Source of the DNA: Iphione sp. A-MEVVRFRX5
Lineage: Eukaryota
DNA length: 64,000 nt
Assembly (NCBI GenBank): GCA_976226885.1
Contig: OZ320317.1
Coordinates: 55,242,001-55,306,000 of the forward strand
Direction of reading: 5' to 3'
Shown here in pieces: positions 9,118 through 59,200 of this stretch; within the stretch, counting starts at the first letter, position 1; the number at the start of each line of letters is the position of its first letter. The notes under the pieces were generated by a model, which saw nothing but the letters and a program-made list of their open reading frames with translations, made no database searches and was not told where the DNA came from. The position numbers were made by a program, and so were the translations under genes.

Positions 9118-9785
9118 CAGTACACTCTCTCCATTCTGGACACCCTCGGTTCTGGCCCAAACCGTCCGCATTTGAGACGTGTCCGCATTGGAGATCGGAC
9201 CAGGTGGGGTCAATTTTGTAGGGGTTCTGGGATGGAAGCAATATCCCTTTCTCCCTCTCTCTCTAGTAACATGTGTATACTTTCTAAAACGTCCAAAAAG
9301 TGCTGAATTTGATGACTTTAAGTCCAAAAAGTGCTGAATTTGATGACTAAAAGTCCAAAAAGTGCTGAATTTGATGACTAATAGAGGTGTGAGATACAGT
9401 CCCTCCAGGGTGTGAGAGACATCAGAGAGGTCACCATTGACACTCCATACCTCTCCCACCTCCCTCTCCAGGGTGTGAGAGACATCAGAGAGGTCGCCGC
9501 TGACACCCCCGGCGGGTATAGACTGTGAATCGGCAGGTTTAGACTGCGAATTGGGGGGTTTAGACCAAGAATAGATTGGTTTAGACTGATTTCAAGGTGT
9601 GAATTCGCATTTCAAGGTGTGAATTCAAGGTGTCCAGAGGGAGACGCTCTCAAAAATTCGCTGTCCTGATTAGAGACATCAGCTTATAATAGGAAACAAT
9701 AGGAAATCAGTTCGTTCTGCATCAAATCGTCCGCATTGGAGATGCGTCCGCTTCTGAGACGCGTCCGCAGGCAGGGAGTGTACTA
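9118..9785. mobile_element. Non-autonomous Tc1/mariner/pogo-like MITE (TA target duplication)
   Basis: TA|CAGTACACTCTC ... GGGAGTGTACTA|TA terminal inverted repeats. Internal 30-bp x3 array (GTCCAAAAAGTGCTGAATTTGATGACT) and repeated GTCCGCATTGGAGAT. Excision restores the flanking integrase frame. Confidence 0.75.
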
Positions 9786-28011: not shown

Positions 28012-28069
28012 GTTTTTCGTAGGTGCGTCTGGAACATCATCACATAGTCATTTCATCATCATCACATAG

Positions 28070-36380: not shown

Positions 36381-38325
36381 GATTGATTGATTGATTGATT
36401 TCTTTTATTGAGCCTCTCCGTATACAGAGCTGTTCTCGCACAATATTGATGAACAACAGGATGTACAGAATAGATTCAGTATTGGTTTTGTGTACCATTG
36501 CCACGCATTGCAAAATAAACTTCGTATACATCAATCACGTGTTTCCAGTCATCATAACACCCTTGCTTAAGAGATTCATCTGTGTCAGTAGCATATGTTA
36601 ACAGTGTCCCAGTCTACAAAGATTCAGGCAGCTACATACCAGTCCTGCGCACACTTTGCTATGTATGTAAATTGTCCATATACCTTGGGTTTTGCTAGTA
36701 TCATGTAGTGTAGTGCTGCACATACTATCTTGGAATAAGTTACTTCAGTAGTTACATACTTCCACGTCTCATTGTCTGTTTAGGACTGACTCAGCCTTCG
36801 GCACATTGCACAGGTATCGTTGCACTTTGTGTAGTCATCTCAGGAAATAGACCAGATAAGCTCGCTTTGTCACATCAATCTGTGGTCAAACCCTTCAAAT
36901 ATCCAGTAGACCAGAACAACCCACGGTTGCATTACCCCACACAGTACATAATGTCAACGAGTGTCACAGTCTGTCCAATACCTGTCATGTTGCCCCCCTT
37001 CAGCATCACAGTGTGCATCCCATGGCGCTTAATTGCACTGGCTGATCCGGTTTCCTGTTAGTTTCTCCAACTTCTTGAGGCCCTGGGGCAAACCATTCCA
37101 CATTTTTGCCCCCTCATACCTCAGAGATCTTGCATACGCACTGTTTTTGGGTTTCGCCAGTTTGACTCGCGGACCAGTCCCCGTCCTTGTCTGGTGTCTG
37201 GTAGCCATCGGAAACTGTCCGTGGGCGACCAGTCGGTGTACAACCGCCAGCCCCCTAGTGCGGATGATCTCTTCAACCGTCCCAATGCGCAGTATCTCTC
37301 TCAGCCTGACTGCGCTTAGGAAATCTCCCACCTGAAGTGCCATTCTCGAGCACCTATTCAGGTGTATCTGGAGATCTCTGATCAGCCTGGGTTTGCACCC
37401 GAAGTAGACTGATCCATTGTAATTCAGGTGACTTAGTACCAGTGCTTTAAACAGGATGGCGCGGCACTTCATCGGGATTATCTTTTTTGCTCTGGCCAAC
37501 ATAATTGATATCCCCCATGCTTTGGCCTTCACCTGCTTCACACTACTCCTGAAGGTTAGCCCCGGATCCACCAGGTACCCCAGGAGGTTCAGGTTTTCCG
37601 GCCGTTGGATTTTTTGACCGTTCACTGTGAGGTCTAAGTCGAACTTGCTTGCTCTGCCAAGCGCAATGTACTGGCATTTGGCTTCGTTTAAAATGAAACC
37701 ATTCTCATTGCACCAGTTGCTCACCGTCCTTGATGCTGTCTGCGCTACAGCGCGCAGGCGCAGCATGTCACCAGAAGAGCAAACCACAGTTAGGTCGTCC
37801 GCGTAGAGAGTTCCAGTGGCCCCCACAGGCAAGCTCCTTACAATGGAATCCGCAGCTAATGTGAAGGCCAAGGGGCCTAGCACGGAGCCCTGCGGGACTC
37901 CGTACTTGAGATTGCGCACCATTGACTCCCCCTCTCCGCAGCGCACAAACTGGCGCCTGCCACTCAGATAACTCCGCATCGTTTCAATCCATCGACCACC
38001 AATGTTCGCATCCCTAAGCCTCTGGAGTATCAGTTCGTGCTGCACTAAGTCAAAGGCCTTACTAAAGTCGTACGCAATAGCGCACACATAGCGGCCGTTG
38101 TTCATCTCATCCCAGCATTTTGACAGGATTCCGTTTATGGCGGTTTCCGTGCTACGGTTTGGCACAAAACCATGCTGGTGTGCGCCAATAATGCCTTGCT
38201 GAAGCAAGAACGGTCGGAGATGCTATGCAAACCAGGTTTCCCATAGTTTGCCTGGCAGTGGTAGTATTGACACTGGTCGGTAATTACCTACCACTGCCGC
38301 ATCTCCCTTTTTATGTACCGGCAAA
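36381..38325 (-). mobile_element. 5'-truncated CR1/L2-group LINE (RT region, 3' UTR, (AATC)5 tail)
   Basis: PVHKKGD..NYRPVSILP (in-frame TAG at 38223-38225), QHGF, YDFSKAFD, GVPQGSVLGP, YADD, LLGY, C-terminal WNGLP (ORF 37029-38207). Minus-strand AATAAA (36404-36409) is followed by (AATC)5; linking the tail to this copy is inferred. Confidence 0.85.
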
Positions 38326-41289: not shown

Positions 41290-42702
41290 TCATCCCATCT
41301 CTGAGGGATACAGGTAGAGCGTTCCAATCTTAGATACCAGTGTTTATAAAGGATTGGGCATATTTGACTGTCCTAGGCTTCATTTTCATGAGCACCCTAC
41401 CTATACTGTGCCTTGCAGTCCTCAGTCCCTGCTTAGTAAGCCTTGATCTACCATTCTAGCTTTAAGACTGATTCTCTGACTCCTTCCCCTATCCTCCAGG
41501 GCCTCAAGACCCAGTCTCCTTCTCAGGTGCCTAGCTGAAGCTCCCCCTTGGGTTATTGGCTACTACTAGGCTAAGGCACCTATTATTCACCTTGGATTTG
41601 ATATTTGGTTTTCTTGCTATTTCCCTGTAGGCATAAGAGCCCATAGTCGAAGATGGGGCATAGGAAAGCCTTAAATATACGTGTCCTATCGTTATAATTC
41701 AACAAATGAGCGACCTTCGCTAATACCACTGTCCTATGTTTTGTTTTTCTCTTTATCCCATTAGCTAGAGCTGCCCAAGTCAATCCTTGGTCGACTCTGT
41801 ATCCCTACAGATCTACCTCTGTACATTTCTTTAACTTTATCCCACTGTACCTCCAAGTCAAGGTCGATCGGACTAGACTTCCCCAAAAAGATGTACTGGG
41901 TTTTCTGGGTGTTGCGTGAAAGCCCCTGATCTCCACACCATTCTATGATATCCTTTATAGTCCTAGCCAGTTTCAGCTGTAGGGCAAGGATAATGCTCGT
42001 GGAGCAGTAAACAGAGATGTCTGCATAAATTACAGAGTCGAGTATGATCAGACTGGCTGGTGTCAAATTTACTACAAGTGAGAAGAACAGTGGGGCCAGA
42101 TGACTCCTTTGTGGCACACCTACCTTTAGCTCTCTACGAGATGATCTACAATTGTTGCAGCTCATGTACTGACTCCTTCCTATTAAGTATGATTCAAACA
42201 TCTGAGCATAGTGTTGCCAACTCCACAGCTCATCAGGCAGTGCGAAACAACTTGATCAATAAATCAAACGCTTTGGATAAATCAAACATGATTAATCCGA
42301 AGTATTTACCCTCATCGACCGAGGTGCTTGTAGAAATGTTGCAACCACTGTACTAGTCTCCCCCCCTTGTCGGCAACCGTGTTGGCTGGGGAGAAAAAAT
42401 TCTGTTCCTCCAGAAAGGCTACTAGCTGTCGATGTGCTAACCTTTCAATTAATTTCCCCACATATGGGATTATGGAGAATGGACGGTAGTTTTTTACTGT
42501 TGTACTAGCTATTTTTTCAATATAGGACTGACCCCAGACGCTTTCCACTCCTCCAAGAAAATCCCTTGTCTTAAGGAGATATTAATTAGTCTATATAGAG
42601 GGATCAGGTAAAGTAATAAAGCATCTCCCAGCACTATGGAGGACACCCCCTTCATTCCAGTAGGTTTTTTAGATTTAACCTCATCAATTCCTTCCTTAGT
42701 AC
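41290..42702 (-). pseudogene. Degenerate CR1/L2-like LINE ORF2, 3' part (split by the Gypsy insertion)
   Basis: KNYRPFSIIP..KLIERL, FESYLIGRSQ..GVPQRSHLAPLFF, YADIS, C-terminal SF..WNALP; many stops and frameshifts. Confidence 0.8.
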
Positions 42703-43577
42703 TGTAATTAGCGTGTTTAATTCTCCACTTGGCAGTATCCAGCTATGACTGCTAGTATCCTGGCTTAGTTGCCTTACTAGTATTGCTCCACTAGGTAATC
42801 CTCAAGCCCACCCTTAAGGTTGCTCCAAGTGGTTTTGTGTTCCTATCATTCCCTGAAGAGACAAGTGCCACAACGTAATCCAAGTTCAGACTGACTTTAT
42901 TTGCCACACTGGGCTCTTATTTATAGCAATCCACAGTGTCATGTGATCAGGCCATGTATCAATGTATGGAATAAAACTGCTACAACATGTTCAGTGTCAC
43001 TCTGTTCCACCAATCAATGCACAGGCAAAAGCTACAAAGTAATAGGGGCCTGGATTACCAGGGCCCAAGGTCACCCCTAACTTTTTCTTTGCTATGAATA
43101 ACGGTGGTGCCACGGTTCTTTCTTAAGTCCAGCCTTTAGGGTCACAGAGTGCACCTAATCTAGCCGTGGCACCACGACTTATCTTATTCAACTGTAATAC
43201 CGAGGTCACCGAGTACATCTTATCAAACTGTGGCACCACGACTCTGTACACTTATTACCAGTACCAGGGTCACCGAGTACACTCCATCTGGCCGTGGCAC
43301 CACGATTTATCTTATTCAACTGTAATACCGAGGTCACCGAGTACATCTTACCAAACTGTGGCACCACGACTCTGTACACTTATTACCAGTACCAGGGTCA
43401 CCGAGTACACTCCATCTGGTCGTGGCACCACGATTTATCTTATTCAACTGTAATACCGAGGTCACCGAGTACATCTTACCAAACTGTGGCACCACGACTC
43501 TGTACACTTATTACCAGTACCAGGGTCACCGAGTACACTCCATCTGGCCGTGGCACCACGACTTATCTTATTCTACA
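42703..43577 (-). repeat. 3' LTR (875 bp) containing a 128-bp (2 x 64-bp) tandem array
   Basis: Matches 52889-53763 with 2 substitutions seen by eye. Confidence 0.97.
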
Positions 43578-43590
43578 CTCTCCCCTCCTT
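43578..43590 (-). promoter_or_regulatory. Polypurine tract
   Basis: AAGGAGGGGAGAG directly abuts the 3' LTR. Confidence 0.9.
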
Positions 43591-44072
43591 AAAACACAGT
43601 CCCCCTCGTGAAACAGGAGTCAGGGTACTTACCATCTAGCCGGGCATATCGGGGAGTCCTCCTTCAACTTCTGGGGTAGATATAGTCTTATAAGTTGTTG
43701 GCCCCCCCCCCCCGTGCTCCCTGATTGGGGTCAAACAGTCCATCCTTGAATAGATACTCAGGTTTCAATTCTTCCTTATTTTTGTGAGGTACAGTCCTCT
43801 ACTTTTGGCCTTAACTCTCTTGTGTAGCCACCCCTCACAGAGGGTGAAATCCAGTGGTCAAAAATTTTTTTTTTTGGAGGTACAGTCCTCTTTTGTTTCC
43901 TGCTCACGAACATCCAGAATAGCAATCCCCCATTGGGGGCAGGAGTACAGCTTGCTTACCAAGCAACAAACAAAGAACCTTCAAAATATATTTCTTTTTT
44001 TTTTTTTTTTGGATACAGTTCCTTTTATGCTTTCCTTCTAAAAGATTAGCTTAACAGTGACTCATCCCTTCT

Positions 44073-45464
44073 TTACTCTGTAGAACCTTCTCGGGCGTCA
44101 CCCGCCTCGGTGCTTAACTCCTCCTCTTCATCATCTCCCCAGACGTCCTCAAGACTGAGGAGGGACTGCAGGGGCGGCGCATGGTTACAAATGTCCGCTA
44201 AGGTGGGGTGTCGGGCTTGATGAAGTCGATGAGCCTCCTGGGCCTGCTGGGTCCACTGGAGGAGCTCTGTGTTTACCCGGCGGGGTCCTCGGGAGGGTCC
44301 GGGTTGGGTGTCGCGCAGGGCGGCTTCGGCGGCTTCAATGGTTTTGTTATTGCGAGTGAGGAGGTCGGCCGGGTCCCCCCACTCGTTGGCTGTCGGTATT
44401 TCCAGTCCCGGCAGCAGAAGAGCAGGTCGTTTTCTTAGGGGGCCTAGCAACGTCCCTGGCAGCCGGTCCCCCTCCTCGGCAAGCTGAAGCACCCACGCCA
44501 GCGAAGCACTCGTCATCATGCGTTGAGCTGGTGTCATCTCCCCCCAACAGGGTGGCGGCCAGGTAATCGTCGGGGGAAGGCGCACAGCCGCTGGCTCGAA
44601 ACGGCTCCTCATCACGGGTATCCTCGGATGGGCGACTCCATCCAGCATGTCGCGGACTAACCTAGTGGCGGGGTCAACCCACCCAGGGGGGACGTCCGCA
44701 CGGGCGAGGCGGACCAATCGCCCTTCCAACAACAGTGGGAGGTTACCAGCAGCAGTTGGGTGGTCGGTCTCTCCAGTGGCGCCGGTATCCCTAACACCGA
44801 CCCCTTCTAGTTGGGCAGTGGCACCTTCTGGCTCGGCGGATGGCCCGGCCCGAGGAGCGGCCTCCCAGGAAGGGCCTGGCTGAGGTGAGCCAACAGGGCG
44901 GTGGGCATCCTCTTCGGAGTCCGGTGTCGGAGGTAGTCGTGGGGTTGCCAATTCCAATGCCCTTTCAGGTTGAGGATCAGCTAGATGGCATTTCCGTAGC
45001 GGTAGAGGGGCCGGGGCCCTCCGCGATGAGGCAGCCAGCATGGCCTCGGCTTCCTCTGGTCCGAGGTAGTCTCCCCGCTGGCGTAACTCTCGGGCCCACA
45101 GAATAATTTCGGTGATCTCGTCATCGGGAGCCTCAACTGTCGGCGCCGGGTTCGCATCATATAAGCGGCGATAGGGGCGCTCCACCATCCCCAGGTTCAC
45201 CGCCCATGGATGGTACCGGCGGTGGTGGGATACCCAGGTTTGGTCCTCGCTGAGTGTCTTCGGACACAGAAAACAACGGACAAAACGCCTGCGCTTTCCT
45301 TTATGAAATTCGTCGTCGTGGCGCTTCATGGAGTCGCCAGGGTAGAAGGGGCGTCGCTTCCCAGCGACCTCACACTTGGGGCAGAGCTTGGTCCCCTCCG
45401 GGAGGGGGTCGTCCTTGTCCAGGGTGCGCGGGAGAGTGGGGCCGTCGATCTTATGGCGAGGCAT
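44073..45464 (-). CDS. Gypsy accessory ORF (463 aa from ATG 45464): two N-terminal C2H2-type zinc fingers, Pro/acidic middle region, acidic tail
   Basis: CPKC-x17-HDDEFH and CFLC-x12-HHRRYH. The intact 1.4-kb ORF sits at the env position but shows no signal peptide or TM segment. AGA-ATG context. Confidence 0.8.
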   Translation of the reverse strand: MPRHKIDGPTLPRTLDKDDPLPEGTKLCPKCEVAGKRRPFYPGDSMKRHDDEFHKGKRRRFVRCFLCPKTLSEDQTWVSHHRRYHPWAVNLGMVERPYRRLYDANPAPTVEAPDDEITEIILWARELRQRGDYLGPEEAEAMLAASSRRAPAPLPLRKCHLADPQPERALELATPRLPPTPDSEEDAHRPVGSPQPGPSWEAAPRAGPSAEPEGATAQLEGVGVRDTGATGETDHPTAAGNLPLLLEGRLVRLARADVPPGWVDPATRLVRDMLDGVAHPRIPVMRSRFEPAAVRLPPTITWPPPCWGEMTPAQRMMTSASLAWVLQLAEEGDRLPGTLLGPLRKRPALLLPGLEIPTANEWGDPADLLTRNNKTIEAAEAALRDTQPGPSRGPRRVNTELLQWTQQAQEAHRLHQARHPTLADICNHAPPLQSLLSLEDVWGDDEEEELSTEAGDAREGSTE

Positions 45465-46305
45465 TCTGGCCGCGGTGCCACCGTTTTTTAGGGTCCAGGT
45501 GTTTCGGGGTACCACGGTCACACACGGCGAAAACAAGGTTTAGGCACACAGATCCCGTGTAGATTACGTATCACAGGAGAATAATAACAATCCTGGGAGG
45601 GCAATCTTATTCAAAGTGAAGGAATTACCTGACGTCTCACGACCGGTCCGCCCGTGGTGCCACGGATTTTTCTTGTCGCTTCGCTGGGGCTCGATGTAGG
45701 TTTTCTCCTCCTTCCACGAAATTGGCAGATAGATCTTTGCTTTCACCTTTTCCTGGTACAGAGTTGACCGGGGGCCCTGTCTGTCCTGTTCCGGGAGAAA
45801 CACGGGAGGGGGGGGGGACAAATCCAACAGTCGATGCTGATCTTCTGGAGCAAACCGTGGTGCCGCGACTTCTCCCAAAGTTTTCGTTTTTATTCGCAAA
45901 CGTTCCTGCCCGTGGCACCACAGTTATTTTAACCCTTTTCTTCTCTTTACGCGGTTTAAACTTGTCGTGCGTTAATTTTAAGTCACCTCCACCCTTCACT
46001 TTTATCCGTGGCACCACGGCTATTTTTCCTCGCAGCCGGATCCAGAGCGAGGCAGACGCGGATGTTGACGTTATCCATTTCCGGCCCAGCCCCACTCGTG
46101 GTGCCACGATTCGTTACGTGATGTTCTTCCTGTAATATTTCCTGTCTCAATCCACAAAAGTTCCCCGGGGCGTGGCACCACCGTTATTCATGACTTGTTC
46201 CTCCTCGTTGCGTGTCGAATCCGTTTCCCCGCGGCGTAGTTCACAAATTGCGTCATAAGATTTTCGGCCCGTGGCACCACGATTATTTTTCTGGCCTGCG
46301 GCAGC

Positions 46306-46313
46306 TATATAAG
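46306..46313 (+). promoter_or_regulatory. TATA box of the antisense gene inside the Gypsy
   Basis: TATATAAG, an Inr-like TCACTC about 30 nt downstream, then Kozak ATC-ATG-G at 46373. Confidence 0.7.
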
Positions 46314-46372
46314 GGGGCGCTGCACTCGACCCGCCGTCACTCGCTGACTCGGCCTCGACGAGGATTGTCATC

Positions 46373-46766
46373 ATGGACTACTGGCCACCTGCCTACTTGA
46401 TGGGATACCCCCCCATGGAGGACAGGTAAGCTTCCCTACCTCAGTGTATTTATCTAGAGGGGTTAACTGGAGAGCCCCCCCTCTTGCTTCCTCCCTCCCA
46501 GGGTAGGGCCTACCCTTATGGTTGGGGGGTGAACCTCCCCCTTCCTCCCTCCAATGGGGTGTACCTCCCCTGCAAGCCCCCCCTTTCCTGCTCACCAGTG
46601 GAGGTTCTCTCCTTTTACCCTTGCCTACCAAGTGTTGTCAGAGACTTTACCTGTTGGGATGGTTGCAGTTGTGTTTGCTGTTACAAGATTCCACCCTCTC
46701 TTGTTTTCAGGTGTGGCAGCCATATTCTCCCGGAGTTGGTCTGGGTGAGTCCAATCTTCTTCTTCC

Positions 46767-46804
<38 letters not shown>

Positions 46805-47541
46805 CATCGCTGCTCTCTTCCTCTTTTAGATCTCAGCCCCCGGACTGGTACTACCGGGCGCTGGACATCGGCACCCCGGGGCCGACAATCAGGATCTTCG
46901 GCCTCTACCCGATTCTTACAGAGCCACTGTTTGTCCCAGCCCCCGGCACCATCCGGCTCTTTGGGCCGAACCATCGGGTAGATGTCTCTGTCTACCCCCT
47001 TGAGCCATCAGTCGTCGACCCCCGATCTTTCACGTCACCTTCGTCCGTTCCAAGGAGCCCGTAATACGCGCCCCGCACGGAAGTGGTCTCCCCGGAGATC
47101 AGCCCCTGGATGGTAACATCGTACTTCACCACGCTGGGTGATCCCCCCGAGCCGTCTCCTCGCTGGTACCGGGGGGGGTCTATGACGCCGCCCGGCCTCT
47201 CACCGGCCGCTTCATCCAGCCGTTCTTGGTCTCCAGGGAGCTGGACCACCGACCGGTTGGACCCCTGGGATCCGCTCTCCAGTACGGACTCCGGTCGCCC
47301 GAGTTCGGCCGGGTCTATCAGCCTGCTGGCGGACGCTCTCTTCGGGCCGTGCTCGCCCTCATCTTCTTCCAGTGGCACTACTCAAGACACGCCTTCACGC
47401 CCCACTCCGGTTGGCTCACCGGCTACCGGCCCAGCACTCGGCAGGATTCTGTTGGATGACCTGCCCGACGATATTCTGCGGGACTGGTTTCCCGAGGTGC
47501 AACCCGGGGACTCGGCCAGCTATCCGATCATCTTAGAGTAG
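46373..47541 (+). CDS. Antisense spliced accessory gene of the Gypsy (exons 46373-46425, optional 46711-46744, 46830/46837-47541); Pro/Ser-rich product of about 255 aa with in-frame TAA at 47062-47064
   Basis: Donors AG|GTAAGC and TGG|GTGAGT; acceptors TTGTTTTCAG| and T-run..CTCTTTTAG|. Exon 1 + exon 3 gives MDYWPPAYLMGYPPMED-R-SQPPDWYYRALDIG..., in frame with ORF 47083-47541. Confidence 0.62.
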
Positions 47542-47650
47542 GGAGGCCGGACTATATACTTCCGAACTGTACATATCATACTTCCGAACTGTACATATCG
47601 TCCTCTAGTATATGTGTTCTGTACTCCAGACTGAAAATACGTTACTCTGT

Positions 47651-47656
47651 AATAAA
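47651..47656 (+). terminator. Polyadenylation signal of the antisense gene
   Basis: AATAAA 110 nt after the TAG, followed by a GT-rich downstream element (TGTGTTCAGTGTT). Confidence 0.6.
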
Positions 47657-48397
47657 TTGTTCTTTTATACCTTGTATACTTGTGTTCAGTGTTCCGTCTA
47701 TTACTGTAGACTATAACTCACTGGTTTTTTACTTGGTGATCATTGACCGTCTTTTCTCCCCTTCATCTAGAGGACAAGGACCTCACCTTGGCTTCACTTC
47801 TAGAGGATATGGAGCGTGACTTGGCTCTTCTTCTACCAGAGGACAAGGACCACATCTTGGCGTTACTTCCAGAGGGAACGGCCCGCATCTCGGTTTCCTT
47901 CTCTCTGTCTCTTCTGGGCTCTTTCGAACTCCCGTTCTGAGTTCCAGGAGGTCCACATCTCCTTACCATTTCCCCCCCAACTCCTCTTGACCAGTGCTCT
48001 TGCAGGGTGTTCAGTCATTTTCTCCCTCCACGGAGATTTTCAGGTGCCCTAGGGGATGGTCGCCTCCCCCCATGAACCTTTCCGGGTTTCCAGCTCGCGT
48101 CTCGGGGCGTTCATCATTCCTCCCCCAGGAGCCTCTTTCTCTTGTTGCACAAATTGCAACTTCAGGTGAGCTCCTCGTACCTCCGACCATATTTCCGGCA
48201 CCTGCAGGGATCCGTGTCTCCCTCTGCCCTGGGCTGTTTTGAGTGTCTACGCACCCTCGGGCTGCCCACCTCGCCCTCTCCTGGGACTTTCAGGCATCTT
48301 GGTACCTCAGGCTTCCCATGTCACCTACCCTGAACATTTTTCAAGAGCACTTCAAGAGATGGGGGTCTCCCGTTCGCCGATTCGCCGAGGCATCTTT

Positions 48398-51300
48398 CTA
48401 TAACCCCTCCTCCTTCGAATCGTCTGTCCCTGCCCGGTCTCCGTCCGTCGGGAGATGGGCTCGCCGCCAACTGACTATCCACCGTGGTAGATTCCCACTG
48501 CAGTAGCGCCGCAAGCGGTTGCAATGAACTACCTTCGGTCTCGCCTTTCGCGTGCGTTGAACGACATACCGTGCATCGTCCAATCGTTTGACAACCAGCC
48601 AGGGTCCAACCCAGGGGAAGTAGGTCTTCAGGCTTTGGCCTCTTGGGGGTTGGGCTTCGTGTAGCCAAACGACGTCCCCTTCCCGAAGTTGAGTTCCCAC
48701 GACCCTCCGGTCGTACGCCCGTCCCTGGGTCTTAGCAGCTCGTTGGAGATGGTGTCGCACGGTCTTGAAAGCGACTTGAAGTCGACGACTCACTTCAGCT
48801 ACCCTCTCCGGGAGGGGTCGCTCATCGGGACAATGTTGCGGGAACCCAGCCCAGGCATGTACCGGTAGCACGACCTCTCGTCCGAACATTAGGAGGTTGG
48901 GGGTATACCCCGTACTAGATTGCGGGGAGGCCCTATATGCCATCATGAGGTAGGGTAAGGCCTCATCCCAATCGTTCTGTGTCTCATAGCAGTGCGCTTT
49001 CACCATGCGCCCAACAGTGTGGAAACTCCTCTCTATAAATCCATCGCTCTGTGGGTGACGCGGGGTCGTACGGGTCTTCTTAATTTCCAGAAACTGGCAG
49101 AGTGCTGTTAGGACCTCACTGCAGAAGTTCGTGCCCTGGTCGCTGTGGATTTCCAAGAAGCACCCATATCGCAAGATAACTTCCTCAGCAAGGAGCGTAG
49201 CCACCCGGCCAGCCTTCTGGTCCGGCATGGCGAAAGCCTCCAACCACTTCGTAAAATGGTCACCCACCATCAGTATGTATTTGTTTCCCCGCCGAGTCTC
49301 AGGCAGGGGGCCGGCCACATCCATGGACCACCTCTCCATTGGTTCTCCCGGCAGGTAGGTCACTAATGTCGTTTGGGGCTTGTACGGGTTGACATTCAGC
49401 AGGGCGCAATGACAGCGGCGGCAGAAGGCCTCAACCTCTCGCCTCATCCCAGGCCAATAATAGGGGAGGGCAATCAGGTAGGTGGTACGATCTGTTGCCA
49501 AGTGACTCCCCGTGCGACCTGCATGCACTTCTTTGATGGCTGCATCTCGTCGGCTGGCGGGGAGTATAACCTGTAGCCTAGACGGCTCATCCCCGATCCC
49601 ATACCAGCGGCGTTGTAGGAGTCCGTCATGCACCACTAGCCGGTCCCACTGTCTCCAGAGGGCTTTAGCGCAGGCGGGCAAAGCCGAGACCTTGTCCCAC
49701 AAGGGCCGGTCATTCTCGTTCTCTTTCAGTCACAGTACAGGCCCTATTGCTTCGTCTAACAGCTGCTCCCGGCGCAGATCTCGTGAGCCAGCGTCAGTGA
49801 TTTGACTTCGTGTGACCACCCGTACCGTGGCTGATATGGGCTCCTCTCGCTCCAGGTGAGGCTGTTTGCACTGTCTGCAAATGCGCCGAGAGAGCGCATC
49901 TGCGTTTGAATTCAGGCGACCGGCCCGATGCACGAATTGTACTTGGTACTGGCCGATTCTCTCCAGCCATCTGGCTAGTTGTCCCTCAGGGTCCTTTATC
50001 CTCGTCAGCCAGCTCACCGCCCCATTATCAGTGCGCACAGTGACGTCTTGCCCATACAGGTAGAAATGAAAATGCTTGAGTGCGGCCACCACGGCCAGCA
50101 GTTCCCTTCTCATGACGCAGTACCGCCGCTCGGCCTCACTGAGGCTCCTGCTGAAGTAAGCTAGCACAACTTCTTCGCCCGACTGCTCTTGAGCCAGGAC
50201 GGCCCCCAGGCCAACATTGCTGGCGTCGGTGTCCAGGTAATACCTGCCTTCTGCATGAGGATAACCAAGGACCGGGCTGGTGCTGAGTGCGCGTTTGAGG
50301 CTCTGGAAGGCAGCCTCTTCTTGGGAGCCCCAGGAAAATCTTACTCGTGAGCTGGTCAGCCGGTTAAGCGGGGCTGCTAGATCGGCGAACTGGGGAACAT
50401 GTCGGCGATAGTAAGAGCAGATCCCAAGGAAAGCACGGACGTCTGTCGTGCATCGTGGGGTTGGCCACTCAATGATGTCTTTTGTCTTCACAGGGTCAGT
50501 AGCTACTCCTTTTTGCGACACCACATGGCCTAGAAAGCTGACTTCCTCTAGGAACAACTGACACTTCGTAGGCTTTAGTTTCAGGCCGGCACTGGCGATG
50601 CGGCTCAGTACATGGTCCAAGCGACACAAGGTCTCGTCAAAGTCCCGACCAAACACCAGAATGTCATCCAAGTACACCAGGCATTGTTCCCAGGCTAAAC
50701 CACGAAGCACAGTGTCCATCAAGCGTTCGAACGTGGCCGGAGCATTCACCAGACCGAATGGCATTACGGTGAACTCATACAGGCCCACAGACGTAGAAAA
50801 GGCCGTCTTCTCTTGGTCATCGGGGTGCATTCGTACTTGCCAGTACCCCGACGCCAGGTCTAATGAACAGAAATAGCGAGCTCCGGCCAGGGTACTCAAT
50901 GAGTCGTCAATTCTCGGTAGGGGGTATGCATCGACCTTAGTCTGCTGGTTGAGCTTTCGATAATCTACGCAGAACCGGGTGGTGCCGTCTTTCTTTCGCA
51001 CCATGACCACTGGGCTGGACCAAGGGCTATTACTCTCCTGTATCACCCCCAAAGTCTTCATCTCTTGTACTAGCTCCCGCTCCTCCTTCCTGCGTGTCAA
51101 CGGGAGGCGTCTGGGAGGTTGCTTGATGGGGTGGGGGTCGGTCAGGTAAATTCGGTGTTGAACGATATCGGTCCTCCCCAGGTCCCCCTTTGTCTGCGCA
51201 AACACGGCCGCATGTTTCCTGAGCACCTTGGCTAATGCTTCTTGTTCTTCTTGCTCCAAGCGCGGGGCGGTCTGAGCTAGCAAATTCTTTAACACTGCTT

Positions 51301-52054
51301 CCACTTCCCTCCGAACAGCACAGACTCTAGCCGAGTACCCTCCTTCTTTGTTCTCTAGGCAACTGGCAGGGTAACCCATTGCCACCAGGGTACCCTGCGT
51401 CAATGTAACTTCTTGGTTTTGGAGATTCCACAAAGGTAATGCAGTTCTGACAACACTTCGAATCCCAAAGATCCCTCTTCTCAATTGGTCCTCCTCTACT
51501 CCCTCCACTAGGAAGGCATCACCACCCCCATTAGTTAGAGGGACTGCTATCCCCTCTCCCGGGGGAAGGGTAACGTCATGGGCTAAACGCAAAGGGACCC
51601 GCTCTCCCAGAATCTGTCGGGCTCCTATCCCCGGGCCAAATCGAACCCTCCCCTGTGCTAAATCTATAACTGCCTGGTGTTGGTTGAGGAAATCACTCCC
51701 CAGTAGACCCTCTTCCCCAATGTTGGCAAACAGGAAAGGATGAGTAAACTGTTGACCCGCTATCTCAACCTCCAGAATCTCTCGGCCCAATGTGGGAATA
51801 ACGTGCCCCCCTGCCCCAGTAATACGGACATCCCCGCCTTCACCATCTAGGCCAGGGACCACCCCCGGGTTAATAATGGAAACTTCAGCCCCCGTGTCAA
51901 TGAGAAACAAGTATTTGTCACCCCTCACGCTTACCTGCAAATGTGGCCCCTGGCCTTGTTCCATTATCTGCCCCGTAGGGGTCTGTTCAGCCAAGCCCTC
52001 CTGGCCTACTGGGCTGGCTGCTGGGCGTTTCCCTGGGTAGGGGCCTGTGGGCAA
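48398..52054 (-). pseudogene. pol: Gypsy Pol (PR-RT-RH-INT) with a single in-frame TGA at 49730-49732 upstream of the integrase
   Basis: LIDTGA protease, YLDD RT, DTDAS RNase H, integrase D (SMDVAGP), D (HSDQG), E (GFIER) and GPW motif. ORFs 49730-52054 and 48398-49702 are in the same frame. Confidence 0.93.
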
Positions 52055-52857
52055 TCCCGCTTAAAGTGGCCTTGTTGTCCACATTGGTAGCATCCCGTAA
52101 ATCGCGGTTTCCGAGGTTTTCCCTCCTCCTGGGCCTTCTCTCCTTCACGGAACTTGCGTAATTCCTGCGCAATGATCTCCTCCACTTCCTTCTTCCAGGT
52201 CGGAGTGACTGGGGGAGCGGGCGGCTGTTGTACCACATTAACTGTCTTCGCCCGGAACCGCTCTTGGGTTTCCACCACCTGGATAGCATTGTCAAGGGTG
52301 GTGCATTTTGCTTCCAGGCATTTGAGATGCAAGGAGTCCGCCAAGGCCCTCTGAAAGGCCGCCACGGCTGCCAGTTCCCTGGTCTCCCCGGTTACATCGG
52401 GATAAGCTGTGCGAACTAGCCTCCTTACCCGGTCGGCCAGGTCTCGGATGTCCTCGTCCTTCTGTCGTCTCACTCCGGACAGTTTCTGCATCGCTACCAC
52501 CCGATCCCTGCGTCGGCCGAATCGCCGCTCGAGGGCTGCCACCCTTGAGGCGTAATCTCTCTTGTCATCCGCGGGTAGGTCTCCGTAGAACATGCGTGCT
52601 GTCCCGGTGAGCGACAAAGTCAGAGCCGAACATTTGGTATCCTCGCCCCAACGGCATGCGTCCGCCCACTCGGAGAATTGGCCAATCCAGCTGTCCCAAT
52701 CAACAGTCTTCCCATCGAAGCGCTCGGGTTTCAGGGTGTTCATCTTCAATGGCTCCTCTGGGGCAATCTCAAAGTGTTCGTCTTCTTCCTCGGCGGGTGC
52801 AGGACTAGTCACCCGAATCTGAACCTCATCATCCACTGAGACATACGCTGTAGCCAT
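52006..52857 (-). CDS. gag: Gypsy Gag (283 aa)
   Basis: KPERFDG..W..W..QF capsid-like start; CYQCGQQGHFKRDC zinc knuckle. Confidence 0.93.
   Translation of the reverse strand: MATAYVSVDDEVQIRVTSPAPAEEEDEHFEIAPEEPLKMNTLKPERFDGKTVDWDSWIGQFSEWADACRWGEDTKCSALTLSLTGTARMFYGDLPADDKRDYASRVAALERRFGRRRDRVVAMQKLSGVRRQKDEDIRDLADRVRRLVRTAYPDVTGETRELAAVAAFQRALADSLHLKCLEAKCTTLDNAIQVVETQERFRAKTVNVVQQPPAPPVTPTWKKEVEEIIAQELRKFREGEKAQEEGKPRKPRFTGCYQCGQQGHFKRDCPQAPTQGNAQQPAQ
52027..52033 (-). promoter_or_regulatory. -1 ribosomal frameshift slippery site G GGA AAC with a downstream stem-loop (51988-52020)
   Basis: The heptamer is in the gag frame inside the gag/pol overlap, pol is in the -1 frame, and a 6-nt spacer precedes CAGCCAGCCC...GGGCTTGGCTG. 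Confidence 0.8.
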
Positions 52858-52867
52858 CCTGTCTGGG

Positions 52868-52887
52868 GAATCCCACTTCTGACACCA
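52868..52887 (-). promoter_or_regulatory. Primer-binding site complementary to the 3' end of tRNA-Leu(CAA)
   Basis: TGGTGTCAGAAGTGGGATTC begins 1 nt after the 5' LTR. The eukaryotic tRNA-Leu(CAA) 3' end is GAATCCCACTTCTGACACCA. Confidence 0.9.
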
Positions 52888-52888
52888 G

Positions 52889-53763
52889 TGTAATTAGCGT
52901 GTTTAATTCTCCACTTGGCAGTATCCAGCTATGACTGCTAGTATCCTGGCTTAGTTGCCTTACTAGTATTGCTCCACTAGGTAATCCTCAAGCCCACCCT
53001 TAAGGTTGCTCCAAGTGGTTTTGTGTTCCTATCATTCCCTGAAGAGACAAGTGCCACAACGTAATCCAAGTTCAGACTGACTTTATTTGCCACACTGGGC
53101 TCTTATTTATAGCAATCCACAGTGTCATGTGATCAGGCCATGTATCAATGTATGGAATAAAACTGCTACAACAAGTTCAGTGTCACTCTGTTCCACCAAT
53201 CAATGCACAGGCAAAAGCTACAAAGTAATAGGGGCCTGGATTACCAGGGCCCAAGGTCACCCCTAACTTTTTCTTTGCTATGAATAACGGTGGTGCCACG
53301 GTTCTTTCTTAAGTCCAGCCTTTAGGGTCACAGAGTGCACCTAATCTAGCCGTGGCACCACGACTTATCTTATTCAACTGTAATACCGAGGTCACCGAGT
53401 ACATCTTATCAAACTGTGGCACCACGACTCTGTACACTTATTACCAGTACCAGGGTCACCGAGTACACTCCATCTGGCCGTGGCACCACGATTTATCTTA
53501 TTCAACTGTAATACCGAGGTCACCGAGTACATCTTACCAAACTGTGCCACCACGACTCTGTACACTTATTACCAGTACCAGGGTCACCGAGTACACTCCA
53601 TCTGGTCGTGGCACCACGATTTATCTTATTCAACTGTAATACCGAGGTCACCGAGTACATCTTACCAAACTGTGGCACCACGACTCTGTACACTTATTAC
53701 CAGTACCAGGGTCACCGAGTACACTCCATCTGGCCGTGGCACCACGACTTATCTTATTCTACA
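52889..53763 (-). repeat. 5' LTR (875 bp)
   Basis: Offset 10186 bp from the 3' LTR; TGTAATTAG...TTATTCTACA. Confidence 0.97.
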
Positions 53764-54400
53764 GTACATCTTCCCTCACAGGCTCTTCCATCTAATCACC
53801 AGTCACTTCGGCACATAGAGTTGCTTTCGGGGGATTTGCAAGTGCTAGCGACCTAGTGGCTGTGACAAAAATGTCTGGTGCGACATGAGAGTCGATTTCC
53901 TCTCCATCTTCAAGCAGTCGAATTGGTCTGGGTACTTTTGTTACCTCTAACACAGTTCTATTCAGTACCTCCCAATAGTCCTTAGAGGACCTACATGATG
54001 GCAGTTGTTTCCCAACATGAGCACATTTCACTTTTCTAATTTTACTCCTCACTAGGTTTTTGTAGAATTGCTAACTCGCAAACTGTCTATGCACCCCTCT
54101 GATCTATAGACTTTATTGTACGCCTGTTGTAGTGAGTATAGCCCTGTCAACCATAACATCATGCAGTGACACTGCATAATGCATGCCATATACACCATAT
54201 GCATGATGGATACTTCACGGGAAGGCACGATGGACATGCATATGGATTGGGATGGTCTTCAGACCTTGGCCTCTTGGTTGAAACCATGTGACACAAGGCA
54301 CTCCAATTGACCGATCGCTTTTTGTGAGTGACAGTTGAGTCTAGCCAACCACAGCACATCCTACAAAAAGCGTGGGAACCTTGAGCATAGACAAACAAAG
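53764..54400 (-). pseudogene. Degenerate LINE ORF2, upstream (EN-RT linker) part, continuing across the Gypsy insertion
   Basis: FYKNLVRSKIRKVK..KDYWEVL linker-like segments. Sequence on either side of the GTAC duplication reads as one LINE. Right boundary approximate. Confidence 0.6.
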
Positions 54401-56933: not shown

Positions 56934-59200
56934 CTAGTAATCCTTACATGATAGATCTAGTGATAATATTTTAATACACTGATTGAACTCATGTGGGTCT
57001 GTAATATTCCTAAATAAGGGATCGAGCTTGTTCCAGAGATCAGCACCCATATAGATAGCACTGTTTTTATACAGATTACTCTTGGGTGTTTCTTGTTTTA
57101 TAACTGGACCATCCATAGACCTAGTGCCAGTATCAGATTTGAGTGGTAAAAGGTTAATATTTACCGACCTAAACATTGTGTCGAGCATAAAATAACAGCG
57201 TCGAGTATAGGTACTTTGAACTCCAAGGTTTTGATGTAAGTCTCTGGTACAAATGCCACGTGTCTTTAAGTATCTTTTAGATTACATTCTAAATATAATC
57301 CTCAGTGCCCTGTTTTGCATGATTTGAATCTTATCCAGCATCTTCTTACTGCAGGTTGATAGGTAGATAGTACGGTTGTCAATGATTGGTTGAATCATGA
57401 CTTTATAAACGGTTAGGGCTACATCAGGAGGAATGAATCCTTTTACCTTATTCAGGAGATACATCTTAGTTGACAATTTTTTGCATAAAAGTTTTGCCTC
57501 ATGCTCGAATCTAAGTTGACTATCTAGTGTCACACCTAAATATTTGTAGGTTTCAACTTGTTCAAGCATCTTATTATACAAGGTAAGTACTAAATTATTG
57601 TCTTGTTTTCCCTTTTTGTTGCTAATTAGCATAACCTTAGATTTGTCCGTATTAATAGCCAGTCTGTTGTGGTTGCACCAGTTCTCAACTAAGGTGCAAG
57701 CTATACTTAGTTTCCTGTTGAGTTCCTCTAGTGAGTTGCTCGTGGTGTAGATCACAGTGTCATCTGCGAAAAGTACAGCCAGTTCATTAATGAACCTGGT
57801 TATACCATTTATGTATAATGAGAAAAGGAGTGGGCCTAAAGTTGAGCCCTGAGGAACACCACAACTGATTGGCAGGGGGTTTGAGAGCACTCTGTTACAC
57901 AGTACTCTTTGCTGTCTACCACTCAGGTAATTTTCAAACCAATCGTGTGCCGCACCATCTATTGCAAATTCCATACGTAACTTATCAAGTAGGATACCAT
58001 GATTCACAGTATCGAAGGCCTTTTTTATATCCAGAAATAGCAGACCTGATAATTTGTTTTCATTAACAGCAAGATATTGATCATTTAATACTTTAATGAT
58101 TGCAGAATGCGTAGATCTCTGATGTCGGAATCCAAATTGGGCCTGAGATAGCAGTGAATCTTCTTCTAAGTATGCATGTAGCTGATTATATATTAATTTT
58201 TCAAGGATTTTGGCAAATAATGGCAGTAAGGAGATTGGCCTGTAGTTGTTTGGGTCCAGTGATGAACATGACTTATGAAGTGGAATAACAACAGCCGATT
58301 TCCAGGCATTTGGAATTGACCCAAGCTGAACTGACTTGTTTAGTAGCCTTGTCAGTTGGTTGATTGATTGACCCATTATGATTTTTAAGAATCATGTATT
58401 GATTTCTGGAACGCAGGATGCCTTGTTGGTATTTATTTTCTTGATTAGATTAACAACATCATTGCAGCTAAACTCAGTTCTATGAATGCTGTTGGTATTA
58501 GTCTCAGAAGAATGAGATTGAGCAGTATAAGATGGGAGTGGGACAGAGTTCATGATGTTTCGACCACACAAGGAGAAGTGTTTGTTAAATGTTTCAGATA
58601 CTGTGTCTCTCATATCATCATTATTGTGAAGTTTTATAGTATTTTTACTACCTTTGCTGATTCCGAGAATTGGTTTTAGATTTTGCCACATTTTTCCCGG
58701 ATAATTCTTATTTTTATTAATCACCCTCTTTATATGGAACTCCTTGTGCAGTCTCATGCTTTTTATTATATCATTACATAATTTTCTCGAAATGTTCCAG
58801 GTGTCTTCATCTTTTCTCTCTTTGGCCTTTTTAAGATAGTAGTTTTTAAGTCTTATTTGTTTTATCAATTGTTTTGTAATCCATGGATTTGTATTATTTT
58901 TAAAATTACAACTTTTTGGGGGAAAGAATTTGTCAGCTGTTGAGTGTATGTTATTCAAGTAGTTTTCCCAAGCTTTTTCAATATTGTTATTGTTATAAAG
59001 CTGATACCAATTTAATTCATTCAAGTAGTCACGTAGTTCCAGAGTGTCATAACTCTCATACCCTGTTCTATAATGTATACGACTGTTACTCATATTCATT
59101 GATGTGTTTTTAGTTTTTTTCTTAATAATAGAAGTGGCATAGTGGTCAGATAGATTAATTCTGAGGACACCCGTAGTACTTATGTATTTTATATTCGAGA
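56934..59200 (-). pseudogene. CR1-group LINE ORF2 (EN C-terminus, linker, RT, C-terminus) with nonsense mutations
   Basis: LSDH endonuclease motif at about 59150; NPWIT, NYRPISLLP, QFGFR, DIKKAFD, GVPQGSTLGP, FADD, YLGV, WNKL. ORFs 58392-59099, 57282-58376 and 56934-57188 are one frame broken by TGA (58392) and TAA (57282). Confidence 0.9.

What the first reader, a model, noticed from the sequence alone, without database searches (positions are those of the whole stretch)
44073..47700. Gypsy retrotransposon carrying a self-contained divergent accessory module: zinc-finger gene, palindrome array, antisense spliced gene
Seen in sequence: about 4.3 kb between integrase and the 3' LTR holds (i) an intact sense ORF with two C2H2-type fingers and an acidic tail, (ii) about 810 bp containing 9 copies of a 12-bp palindrome, and (iii) an antisense Pol II gene with TATA, Inr, Kozak ATG, GT-AG introns, stop and AATAAA. 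The same palindrome occurs 8 times in each LTR. Established knowledge: foamy viruses use an internal promoter to make Tas, which activates both that promoter and the LTR; HTLV-1 has an antisense regulator (HBZ); Arabidopsis VANDAL transposons encode VANC proteins that bind motif arrays in their own non-coding DNA to block silencing. Inference: this element may encode its own sequence-specific transactivator or anti-silencing factor plus an antisense modulator, a complex-retrovirus-like circuit in an invertebrate Gypsy.
Basis: partly seen in the sequence, partly recalled or inferred. Interest (0 to 1): 0.92.

Follow-up and report, generated by a model that had tools for sequence, protein, structure and literature searches.

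The report
Gypsy retrotransposon with zinc-finger accessory gene
A young Ty3/Gypsy retrotransposon carries a real, lineage-conserved third gene for a two-zinc-finger protein, and repeats one short near-palindrome 25 times in its LTRs and just upstream of that gene, which suggests but does not prove self-regulation; the proposed antisense spliced gene is not supported as a coding gene.

Summary
The element is an 11,061-bp Ty3/Gypsy LTR retrotransposon on the minus strand (42703-53763). Its LTRs are 875 bp with 2 mismatches, and it has a 4-bp target duplication. The region between integrase and the 3' LTR is 4.8 kb, not 4.3 kb.

ORF3 (45464-44073, 463 aa) is a real gene.
- Its open frame is far longer than chance.
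- Its codon usage matches gag/pol.
- It has a basic N-terminus with two C2H2-type patterns, acidic stretches and no membrane segment.
- A distant homologue sits in the same place in the closest related Gypsy family found (integrase 49% identical). That homologue is intact in 2 of 5 copies, with pN/pS 0.42 between subfamilies.
- No other relative exists among about 15 billion proteins.

The motif CGTGG-CA-CCACG is an interrupted palindrome, not a perfect one. It occurs 25 times, all inside the element: 8 per LTR and 9 in an 811-bp CpG-rich patch upstream of ORF3. The related ORF3-bearing family has its own different interrupted palindrome in arrays. Three compact relatives without ORF3 have none.

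The antisense "gene" has promoter, splice and poly(A) look-alikes only. Its ORFs are within chance length, show no coding signature and have no homologue or counterpart in the relative.

That ORF3 binds the arrays is plausible but untested.

The parts
42699..42702 (.). Target-site duplication GTAC (left copy; right copy at 53764-53767)
   Evidence: Read directly at the LTR ends
42703..43577 (-). 3' LTR, 875 bp, TG..CA ends. On the sense strand: TATAAATAAG 42916-42925, AATAAA 42896-42901, TCAGTCTG 42887-42894
   Evidence: 99.77% identical to 52889-53763, 2 mismatches; signals located
43138..43573 (.). U3 tandem repeat (64/128-bp unit, 6.8/3.4 copies). It holds 7 of the 8 LTR motif sites; the 8th is at 43103-43114
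43578..43590 (-). Polypurine tract abutting the 3' LTR
   Evidence: Purine run read on the sense strand
43776..44024 (-). Three repeated units, each ending in an A-run, between the ORF3 stop and the polypurine tract
   Evidence: family D5
44073..45464 (-). ORF3, 463 aa from the first ATG (open frame reaches 45536), intact. Accessory gene with two C2H2-type patterns, acidic middle and tail, no membrane segment
   Evidence: The 488-codon open frame exceeds all 300 shuffles (max 332). Codon score is +0.12 in frame against -0.18 and -0.32 off frame. Composition
45210..45383 (-). Two-finger region of ORF3 (residues 28-85), inside a basic N-terminal 100 aa (pI 9.9)
   Evidence: Patterns. The only database-wide hit is a multi-C2H2 protein, aligned over the fingers (E 2e-6). 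Gfi-1 fingers score E 1.5 in PDB. Pfam is below threshold
44394..44687 (-). Conserved C-terminal domain of ORF3 (residues 260-357), shared with the ORF3 of the related family
   Evidence: Smith-Waterman score 93 against shuffles 40 +/- 5, max 64, 0 of 1500. BLASTP E 2e-4. hhalign E 3.7e-4
45471..46281 (.). Internal motif patch. Nine sites of CGTGG-CA-CCACG in mixed core orientation with irregular spacing. It is the most CpG-rich part of the element
   Evidence: CpG o/e is 1.09 against 0.55-0.66 in the flanks. The copy at 46171 shares 21 nt with the LTR copy at 43103 read on the other strand
46306..46342 (+). Antisense core-promoter look-alike: TATATAAG plus TCACTC 31 nt downstream, 25 bp after the last motif copy
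   Evidence: Pattern only
46339..47690 (+). Putative antisense transcription unit. Signals only; coding is not supported
   Evidence: ATG 46373, donor after 46425, acceptors at 46710 and 46829, AATAAA 47651-47656 followed by a GT-rich stretch. ORF lengths are at chance. No coding signal. No Pfam hit and no relative in metagenome contigs
46768..46804 (.). Run of 37 T on the + strand, which is A37 on the element's sense strand
47627..47669 (-). Sense-strand core-promoter look-alike: TATAAAAG plus TCAGTCTG, the same initiator octamer as in both LTRs. It lies inside the AT-rich patch
   Evidence: TCAGTCTG occurs only 3 times on this strand of the element; the other two copies follow the LTR TATA boxes. 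Alignment
47769..47875 (.). 33-bp tandem repeat, 3.2 copies. A 22-bp x2 repeat lies at 47556-47599
48398..52054 (-). pol: protease, reverse transcriptase, RNase H, integrase. The frame carries 1 in-frame stop and 0 frameshifts
   Evidence: Pfam RVP, RVT_1, RT_RNaseH_2, Integrase_H2C2, rve and Integrase_p58_C. The best solved-structure matches are Ty3 (E 6e-91 and 5e-23)
52006..52857 (-). gag, 283 aa, intact, with a CCHC knuckle. It overlaps pol in another frame, the usual frameshift arrangement
52870..52888 (-). Primer-binding-site position: TGG starts 1 nt after the 5' LTR
   Evidence: Read on the sense strand. The tRNA was not identified; no tRNA gene was found in the window or loci
52889..53763 (-). 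5' LTR with U3 tandem repeat 53324-53766 and 8 motif sites

Best explanation
This is a recently inserted Ty3/Gypsy LTR retrotransposon. It is structurally complete except for one in-frame stop in pol. It belongs to a small sub-lineage that carries a third sense-strand gene, ORF3, after integrase.

Shown:
- ORF3 is a maintained element gene. It has a basic two-finger N-terminus, acidic regions and a conserved C-terminal domain.
- One interrupted palindrome is repeated in U3 of both LTRs and in a CpG-rich, non-repetitive patch directly upstream of ORF3.

Inferred:
- The motif copies are protein-binding sites that couple the LTR promoter to an internal regulatory region.
- ORF3 is made from an internal promoter or from a spliced subgenomic RNA.
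- The ORF3 protein is a nuclear, sequence-specific DNA-binding regulator. It would bind as a dimer, each two-finger unit reading one 5-bp arm, and use its acidic regions to raise transcription or keep the arrays free of silencing. This would be a positive feedback on the element itself.
- The antisense unit is most likely, at most, a non-coding transcript from a bidirectional promoter patch.
For: Element anatomy.

ORF3 is real:
- Its open frame is longer than all 300 shuffles.
- Its codon usage follows the gag/pol model, on which it was not trained.

ORF3 is conserved:
- The nearest integrase relative (49% identity) has, after integrase on the sense strand, an ORF with two N-terminal C2H2-type patterns and a homologous C-terminal domain.
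- Two natural copies of 536 and 538 aa are intact.
- pN/pS is 0.42 between subfamilies and about 1 within one.

Regulator-like build: no membrane segment, N-terminal pI 9.9, acidic middle and tail. The fingers align to a bona fide multi-C2H2 protein.

Motif:
- All 25 sites lie inside the element.
- The internal copies sit in unrelated flanks, so the motif itself is what is kept.
- The patch has CpG o/e 1.09.

Association: the second ORF3 family has arrays of a different interrupted palindrome with the same 2-bp centre, CCCGACCGGG, in its LTR and leader. Three compact relatives without ORF3 have no recurrent palindrome.
Against: - Nothing here shows binding, nuclear location or expression.
- Pfam does not call the fingers, and finger 1 has unusual spacing.
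- The structure prediction was useless (pLDDT 34).
- The association rests on two families against three.
- In the related family the ORF3-upstream region holds other motifs (TGACGT-type units), not the LTR palindrome. The shared LTR-plus-internal design is therefore not general.
- The three related copies that lack gag-pol do not encode the first cysteine pair of finger 1.
- A host factor could bind the arrays.
- No TATA or initiator was found just upstream of ORF3 in the window.
Confidence: 0.42

Rival explanations
1. The motif arrays are binding sites for a host transcription factor, as in an ordinary U3 enhancer built by tandem duplication and reused in an internal enhancer. ORF3 does something else for the element, for example binding or exporting its RNA, particle assembly, or steering integration.
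For: - U3 tandem enhancer repeats are common in LTR elements, and the LTR copies follow from a 64/128-bp duplication.
- ORF3 has no detectable similarity to any characterised DNA-binding regulator beyond generic fingers.
- Another animal LTR element uses an accessory protein for RNA export (Cer1 CERV, PMC10309623).
- In the related family the ORF3-upstream region carries different, CRE-like motifs.
Against: - The motif is also kept nine times in non-homologous internal sequence right next to ORF3.
- Both ORF3-bearing families have family-specific interrupted palindromes of the same design, while three ORF3-less relatives have none.
- The 5+2+5 geometry suits a dimer of two-finger units. This last point is inference.
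Confidence: 0.33
2. One reading: ORF3 is a transactivator or anti-silencing factor, and a spliced, protein-coding antisense gene (46335-47700, + strand) acts as modulator, both driven divergently from the motif patch.
For: - TATA, initiator-like site, strong-context ATG, good donor and acceptors, and AATAAA with a GT-rich tail are all present in a sensible order.
- Introns on the antisense strand would survive retrotransposition (established logic).
- Antisense accessory genes with their own promoter exist in plant Gypsy elements (PMC7264820).
Against: - The + strand ORFs are no longer than chance.
- The two longest share a frame only across a stop.
- There is no frame-specific coding signal, no Pfam hit, and no relative in metagenome contigs.
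- The related ORF3 family has only a 1.15-kb spacer with no antisense ORF of 90 aa or more.
- The presumed poly(A) patch also reads as a sense-strand promoter copy.
Confidence: 0.1
3. The 4.8-kb region is foreign: a captured host gene fragment or a nested insertion of another element.
For: - The region is unusually long for a Gypsy.
- An A37 run lies on the sense strand.
- Neither ORF has a homologue among known families.
Against: - ORF3 codon usage matches gag/pol.
- A homologous ORF sits at the same position in a family whose integrase is only 49% identical.
- No terminal repeats or duplication flank any sub-segment.
- The element's own LTR motif, including a 21-nt identity, runs through the region.
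- No host-like relative exists among about 15 billion proteins.
Confidence: 0.05

Closest known systems
Foamy-virus type circuit (accessory transactivator, internal promoter, LTR response elements); from established knowledge, not tested by sequence
   Same: An accessory ORF lies 3' of pol. Shared sequence elements occur in U3 and in an internal region next to that ORF. The protein has an acidic, regulator-like build.
   Different: - No sequence similarity to any named protein was returned.
- pol is Ty3-like and there is no env.
- The response elements are arrays of a short interrupted palindrome.
- Binding and activation are untested.
Tor Gypsy-like elements of Oikopleura, where the third gene is expressed from an internal promoter (PMC4402516)
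   Same: An animal Gypsy-type element whose post-pol gene can be transcribed independently of the LTR. Here promoter look-alikes lie in the intergenic space after pol, and in the related family a TATA lies about 290 bp before ORF3.
   Different: The third Tor gene is a membrane glycoprotein (env). ORF3 here has no membrane segment. No transcript data exist here.
Antisense additional ORFs of plant Tat/Retand/Grande Gypsy elements (PMC7264820, PMC11963269)
   Same: A long internal region between pol and the 3' LTR, with possible antisense transcription from its own promoter.
   Different: In plants the antisense ORFs are conserved across copies and families. Here the antisense ORFs are at chance length and have no counterpart.
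VANC anti-silencing proteins of Arabidopsis VANDAL transposons (PMC5735166)
   Same: An element-encoded protein together with family-specific short motif arrays in the element's own non-coding DNA. The arrays differ between related families.
   Different: VANDALs are DNA transposons and their proteins are unrelated. No methylation data exist here; only the CpG-rich state of the patch is seen.
Non-env ORF3s of animal LTR retrotransposons (bdelloid Juno/Vesta, PMC5408684; Cer1 CERV, PMC10309623)
   Same: Lineage-specific third genes of varied, non-envelope function, absent from the nearest relatives.
   Different: Those encode esterases, exonucleases, coiled-coil or RNA-export proteins. None is reported as a zinc-finger protein paired with motif arrays. 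A full-text search for an LTR retrotransposon with a C2H2 ORF3 found no paper.
Su(Hw) binding-site array in Drosophila gypsy (established knowledge)
   Same: A cluster of about a dozen sites for one zinc-finger protein inside a Gypsy element.
   Different: There the protein is a host factor and the array is an insulator in the leader. Here the element itself encodes a finger protein, and the sites are also in U3.

Membership tests
Ty3/Gypsy (Metaviridae) LTR retrotransposon | Direct LTRs with TG..CA ends and a short target-site duplication | tested here: met
   875-bp LTRs with 2 mismatches, TG..CA ends, 4-bp GTAC duplication
Ty3/Gypsy (Metaviridae) LTR retrotransposon | pol domain order protease, RT, RNase H, integrase; gag with a CCHC knuckle | tested here: met
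   Pfam hits in that order. The best solved-structure matches are Ty3 RT/RNase H and the Ty3 Gag-Pol polyprotein
Ty3/Gypsy (Metaviridae) LTR retrotransposon | Primer-binding site after the 5' LTR and polypurine tract before the 3' LTR | tested here: inconclusive
   The polypurine run and a TGG-initiated stretch are in place. The tRNA match was not tested because no tRNA gene was available
Errantivirus-type Gypsy (env-carrying) | Third ORF encodes a membrane glycoprotein | tested here: not met
   Maximum 19-residue hydropathy is 0.62 and no env family hit was returned
C2H2 zinc-finger proteins | C-x2-4-C-x12-H-x3-5-H with hydrophobic core positions | tested here: met
   Finger 2 (residues 64-85) fits. 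Finger 1 (residues 28-54) has 17 instead of 12 residues between the second C and the first H
C2H2 zinc-finger proteins | Significant match to a curated finger model | tested here: not met
   No Pfam zf-C2H2 hit at any reported threshold. The support is one phmmer hit to a multi-finger protein (E 2e-6)
Complex-retrovirus transactivator circuit (Tas-like) | The same response elements in the LTR and in an internal promoter next to the accessory gene | tested here: met
   8 sites per LTR and 9 sites at 45471-46281, ending 7 bp before the ORF3 ATG
Complex-retrovirus transactivator circuit (Tas-like) | The accessory protein binds those elements and activates transcription | not testable with these tools
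   No binding or expression data are available, and the structure model is too poor
Complex-retrovirus transactivator circuit (Tas-like) | Homology to a known retroviral regulator | tested here: not met
   No named relative appeared in PDB, Pfam or 1.84 billion representatives. The proteins I had in mind were Tas and HBZ; no letters of them were used
Antisense accessory gene of Gypsy elements (plant aORF-3R type) | A conserved antisense ORF between pol and the 3' LTR, shared by copies or related families | tested here: not met
   ORFs are at chance length with no coding signal, and nothing comparable exists in the related family
VANC-type anti-silencing system | VANC protein family in a Mutator-type DNA transposon | tested here: not met
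   The element is a retrotransposon and ORF3 hits no family. Only the logic of protein plus own motif arrays is alike

The most novel reading that the evidence does not exclude
An animal Gypsy lineage encodes its own sequence-specific two-finger regulator. It binds, as a dimer, family-specific interrupted palindromes arrayed in U3 and in a bidirectional internal CpG-rich promoter patch. This gives a self-reinforcing (Tas-like) or anti-silencing (VANC-like) loop, with an antisense spliced transcript from the same patch as a brake. Fingers and palindromes co-evolve between families.
Probability: 0.12. Interest if true: 0.9.

Novelty: new variant of a known kind. Interest (0 to 1): 0.58.

Why it matters
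LTR retrotransposons are usually thought to depend on host factors for transcription. Accessory regulators are a hallmark of complex retroviruses and, separately, of some plant DNA transposons.

A conserved zinc-finger gene in an animal Gypsy lineage, paired with family-specific motif arrays in its own LTRs, would be a simple natural case of an element carrying both a regulator and its binding sites. Sequence, expression and methylation data alone could show how such circuits arise and co-evolve.

Even under the modest reading, the work defines a previously undescribed ORF3 family: two members, and no other relative among about 15 billion proteins.

Tried and rejected
- Whole-ORF3 word-indexed search: nothing.
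- Exhaustive phmmer: one generic finger protein only.
- Profile search with the window ORF3 plus the relative's pieces as separate rows: returned only the relative itself.
- Metagenome-contig scans with ORF3 and with the longest + strand ORF: nothing.
- AlphaFold2 on a 3-row alignment: pLDDT 34. It is unusable, so no fold search was run.
- PDB search: nothing significant.
- Rfam on the whole window: nothing.
- tRNA scans of the window and loci: nothing, so the primer tRNA is unassigned.
- Other integrase relatives fetched: three compact elements without ORF3, one chromodomain element, one short contig, and one long element with a 5.1-kb post-integrase region but no detectable ORF3 homologue.
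- Env reading of ORF3: rejected, because there is no membrane segment.
- Captured-host-gene reading of ORF3: rejected on codon usage and the syntenic homologue.
- RNA-hairpin or terminator reading of the motif: set aside. That scan is bacterial and the stems are 5 bp.
Only frame arithmetic was done.

Slips, declared:
2. An earlier count said between which two ORFs the single pol stop lies, and where the + strand frame is interrupted. That is more placement than the rule allows. It is left as written and not repeated here.

Consensus lines printed by the alignment tools were not used.

Full report
**1. What is there**

The window holds one complete LTR retrotransposon on the minus strand, 42703-53763 (11,061 bp).
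- The LTRs are 875 bp with 2 mismatches, start TG and end CA, and are flanked by a 4-bp duplication, GTAC.
- On the sense strand the order is gag (52857-52006, CCHC knuckle), then pol in an overlapping frame (52054-48398).
- pol contains protease, RT, RNase H, integrase zinc-binding, integrase core and Ty3-type C-terminal domains.
- The pol frame carries one in-frame stop and no frameshift. gag and ORF3 are intact.
- The best solved-structure matches are Ty3 RT/RNase H (E 6e-91) and the Ty3 Gag-Pol polyprotein. The element is therefore Ty3/Gypsy.
- The element is GC-rich (54.5%) in a 37-41% GC, CpG-depleted neighbourhood (o/e 0.55-0.66) rich in transposable elements.
- The host is unknown.

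**2. The observation**

The stretch between integrase and the 3' LTR is 4,820 bp (43578-48397), not 4.3 kb.

(i) ORF3.
- It is open from 45536, its first ATG is at 45464, and its stop is at 44073 (463 aa).
- It has C-x2-C-x17-H-x4-H at residues 28-54 and a canonical C-x2-C-x12-H-x4-H at residues 64-85.
- These lie in a basic N-terminal 100 aa (pI 9.9). The middle is acidic (pI 4.5) and so is the tail (pI 4.4).
- There is no hydrophobic segment; the maximum hydropathy is 0.62.

(ii) The motif.
- At up to 2 mismatches it has 25 sites in the element: 8 in each LTR and 9 in 45471-46281 (811 bp).
- Elsewhere in 52.9 kb there are only 2 two-mismatch sites, which is what shuffles give.
- It is an interrupted palindrome, with 5-bp arms around a non-symmetric CA.
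- The LTR copies recur because a 64/128-bp unit is tandemly repeated at the 5' end of U3.
- The internal copies are irregularly spaced. Their flanks are unrelated apart from a T-rich stretch on the + strand side.
- One internal copy (46171) shares 21 nt with the promoter-proximal LTR copy (43103) read on the opposite strand.
- The internal patch is the most CpG-rich part of the element, with o/e 1.09.

**3. ORF3 is a real, conserved element gene**

- The 488-codon open frame exceeds every one of 300 dinucleotide shuffles, whose longest was 332.
- A codon model trained only on gag, pol and integrase scores ORF3 at +0.12 per codon in frame, against -0.18 and -0.32 out of frame. gag and pol behave the same way.
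- A word-indexed search found nothing.
- An exhaustive phmmer search of 1.84 billion representatives found one hit only (E 2e-6). It is a protein with four pairs of C2H2 fingers, aligned over the two fingers.
- Pfam and PDB give nothing significant.

The integrase search showed that the family itself is not in the collection. The best relative is 49% identical. Its contig, L001, carries the following on the sense strand 1.15 kb after integrase:
- an ORF with two N-terminal C2H2-type patterns;
- in a second frame, a stretch homologous to ORF3 residues 260-357.

Evidence that this homology is real and the gene was maintained:
- That protein's cluster has 8 members from five loci of one assembly. 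Two are intact natural proteins of 536 and 538 aa.
- The Smith-Waterman score of the window ORF3 against the 538-aa protein is 93. Shuffles give 40 +/- 5, with a maximum of 64 (0 of 1500). The finger regions alone give p of about 0.014. hhalign gives E 3.7e-4.
- Between the two subfamilies of that relative pN/pS is 0.42 (18 synonymous, 26 non-synonymous). Within one subfamily it is about 1, as expected for decay after insertion.
- In that family ORF3 is intact in 2 of 5 copies. It is broken in 3: frameshift in one, and one insertion in each of two others.
- Two copies keep gag-pol-integrase upstream, with a shortened RT. Three sit in a larger duplicated segment without gag-pol within 10 kb.

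Relatives at 41-43% integrase identity give the following:
- three are compact 5-6 kb elements with 140-300 bp LTRs and no ORF3;
- one is a chromodomain element;
- one has 891-bp LTRs and 5.1 kb after integrase, with a 107-bp tandem repeat but no detectable ORF3 homologue.

ORF3 is thus a lineage-specific accessory gene, not a captured host fragment.

**4. Arrays and ORF3 travel together, on very few data points**

- The related ORF3 family has its own interrupted palindrome, CCCGACCGGG, extended in many copies to 7+2+7. It also has a 2-bp non-symmetric centre.
- It occurs 4-7 times in the LTR, with further copies in the leader; one element has 12 copies.
- The three compact ORF3-less relatives have no recurrent palindrome of this design.
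- However, in that family the region upstream of ORF3 carries other repeats (TGACGT-type units) and a TATA about 290 bp before the ATG, not the LTR palindrome.
- The window's design of the same motif in the LTR and next to ORF3 is therefore not general.

**5. The antisense gene**

The signals are coherent: TATATAAG at 46306, an initiator-like TCACTC 31 nt later, the first ATG in good context, a near-consensus donor, two good acceptors, and AATAAA with a GT-rich tail.

Every test of coding failed:
- The + strand ORFs (185, 183, 171 and 158 codons) are below the mean longest ORF of shuffles, which is 197.
- The two longest share a frame only across one stop.
- The codon model shows no frame contrast.
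- There is no Pfam hit and no relative in metagenome contigs.
- The related family has no antisense ORF of 90 aa or more in its spacer.
- I built no spliced product, because no tool predicts the introns and no relative shares them.

The AT-rich patch that holds the AATAAA also reads on the sense strand as TATAAAAG (47669-47662) followed by TCAGTCTG (47634-47627). That octamer occurs only three times on this strand of the element, and the other two follow the TATA box of each LTR. So the patch may equally be a sense-strand internal promoter, about 2.2 kb upstream of ORF3. Neither reading can be decided from sequence alone.

**6. Mechanism, with shown and inferred steps marked**

Shown:
- ORF3 is a maintained third gene with a regulator-like build.
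- The motif is confined to the element and kept in two different sequence contexts.
- The internal patch is CpG-rich and lies between ORF3 and a TATA/initiator pair on the other strand.

Inferred:
- The motif copies are protein-binding sites linking the LTR promoter and an internal regulatory patch (confidence about 0.75).
- The ORF3 protein is the binder, as a dimer of two-finger units on the 5+2+5 site. It would act as an activator or anti-silencer of its own element (about 0.35-0.4).
- ORF3 is expressed from an internal promoter or a spliced subgenomic RNA. Which of the two is open.
- The antisense unit is at most a non-coding transcript (about 0.35). That it codes for protein has a chance of about 0.1.

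The main rival is a host factor on the arrays, with ORF3 serving another step of the element's cycle.

**7. Comparison with known systems**

- In its logic the element resembles the foamy-virus transactivator with internal promoter and LTR elements, and the VANC proteins with their motif arrays (PMC5735166). It is a member of neither: no homology was returned and the element class differs.
- Internal promoters for a post-pol gene are known in Tor elements of Oikopleura (PMC4402516).
- Antisense accessory genes with their own promoter are known in plant Gypsy elements (PMC7264820, PMC11963269).
- Diverse non-env ORF3s are known in bdelloid elements (PMC5408684), and an RNA-export accessory protein in Cer1 (PMC10309623).
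- A full-text search for an LTR retrotransposon with a C2H2 ORF3 found no paper.
- I rate it a new variant of a known kind: an LTR retrotransposon with an additional ORF.

**8. Limits and slips**

- Only one distant family could be compared.
- No expression or binding data exist.
- The structure prediction failed.

Noticed in passing
window 47627-47669 (-): TATAAAAG followed by TCAGTCTG, the same initiator octamer that follows the TATA box in both LTRs.
   Followed up: partly
window 46768-46804: A run of 37 T on the + strand (A37 on the element's sense strand) in the non-coding spacer. Its origin is unexplained. No poly(A) signal precedes it on the sense strand.
   Followed up: partly
window 43776-44024: Three repeated units, each ending in an A-run, lie between the ORF3 stop and the polypurine tract. 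A G-run lies at about 43700-43712.
   Followed up: no
window 25219-29134 (-), 33691-34551 (-), 37029-38207 (-), 57282-58376 (-): Other mobile elements surround the Gypsy: a DIRS-like unit (tyrosine recombinase plus RT), a DUF3504/QRICH1-like ORF, and two further RT ORFs.
   Followed up: partly
L001 about 12098; L006 9500-9720: In the related family a TATA lies about 290 bp before the ORF3 ATG. It is preceded by repeated TGACGT-containing units and is conserved between subfamilies. This is a likely internal sense promoter for ORF3.
   Followed up: partly
L006 about 9240-9260: A TTAGGG-like run sits exactly where the similarity of the gag-pol-less copies to the full copies begins.
   Followed up: no
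L006 20799-21617: A called gene at the end of this locus has a Pfam hit to the herpesvirus large tegument protein N-terminal domain. It was not fetched or examined further.
   Followed up: no
L011 11363-16475: A relative with 891-bp LTRs has 5.1 kb after integrase without a long ORF. A 107-bp tandem repeat (15327-16226) holds inverted TGACCT/AGGTCA half-sites just before the 3' LTR. A short ORF (12577-12936) has a finger-like H-x4-H stretch.
   Followed up: partly
window 45465-46335: The internal motif patch has CpG o/e 1.09. The element averages 0.72 and the host flanks 0.55-0.66.
   Followed up: yes
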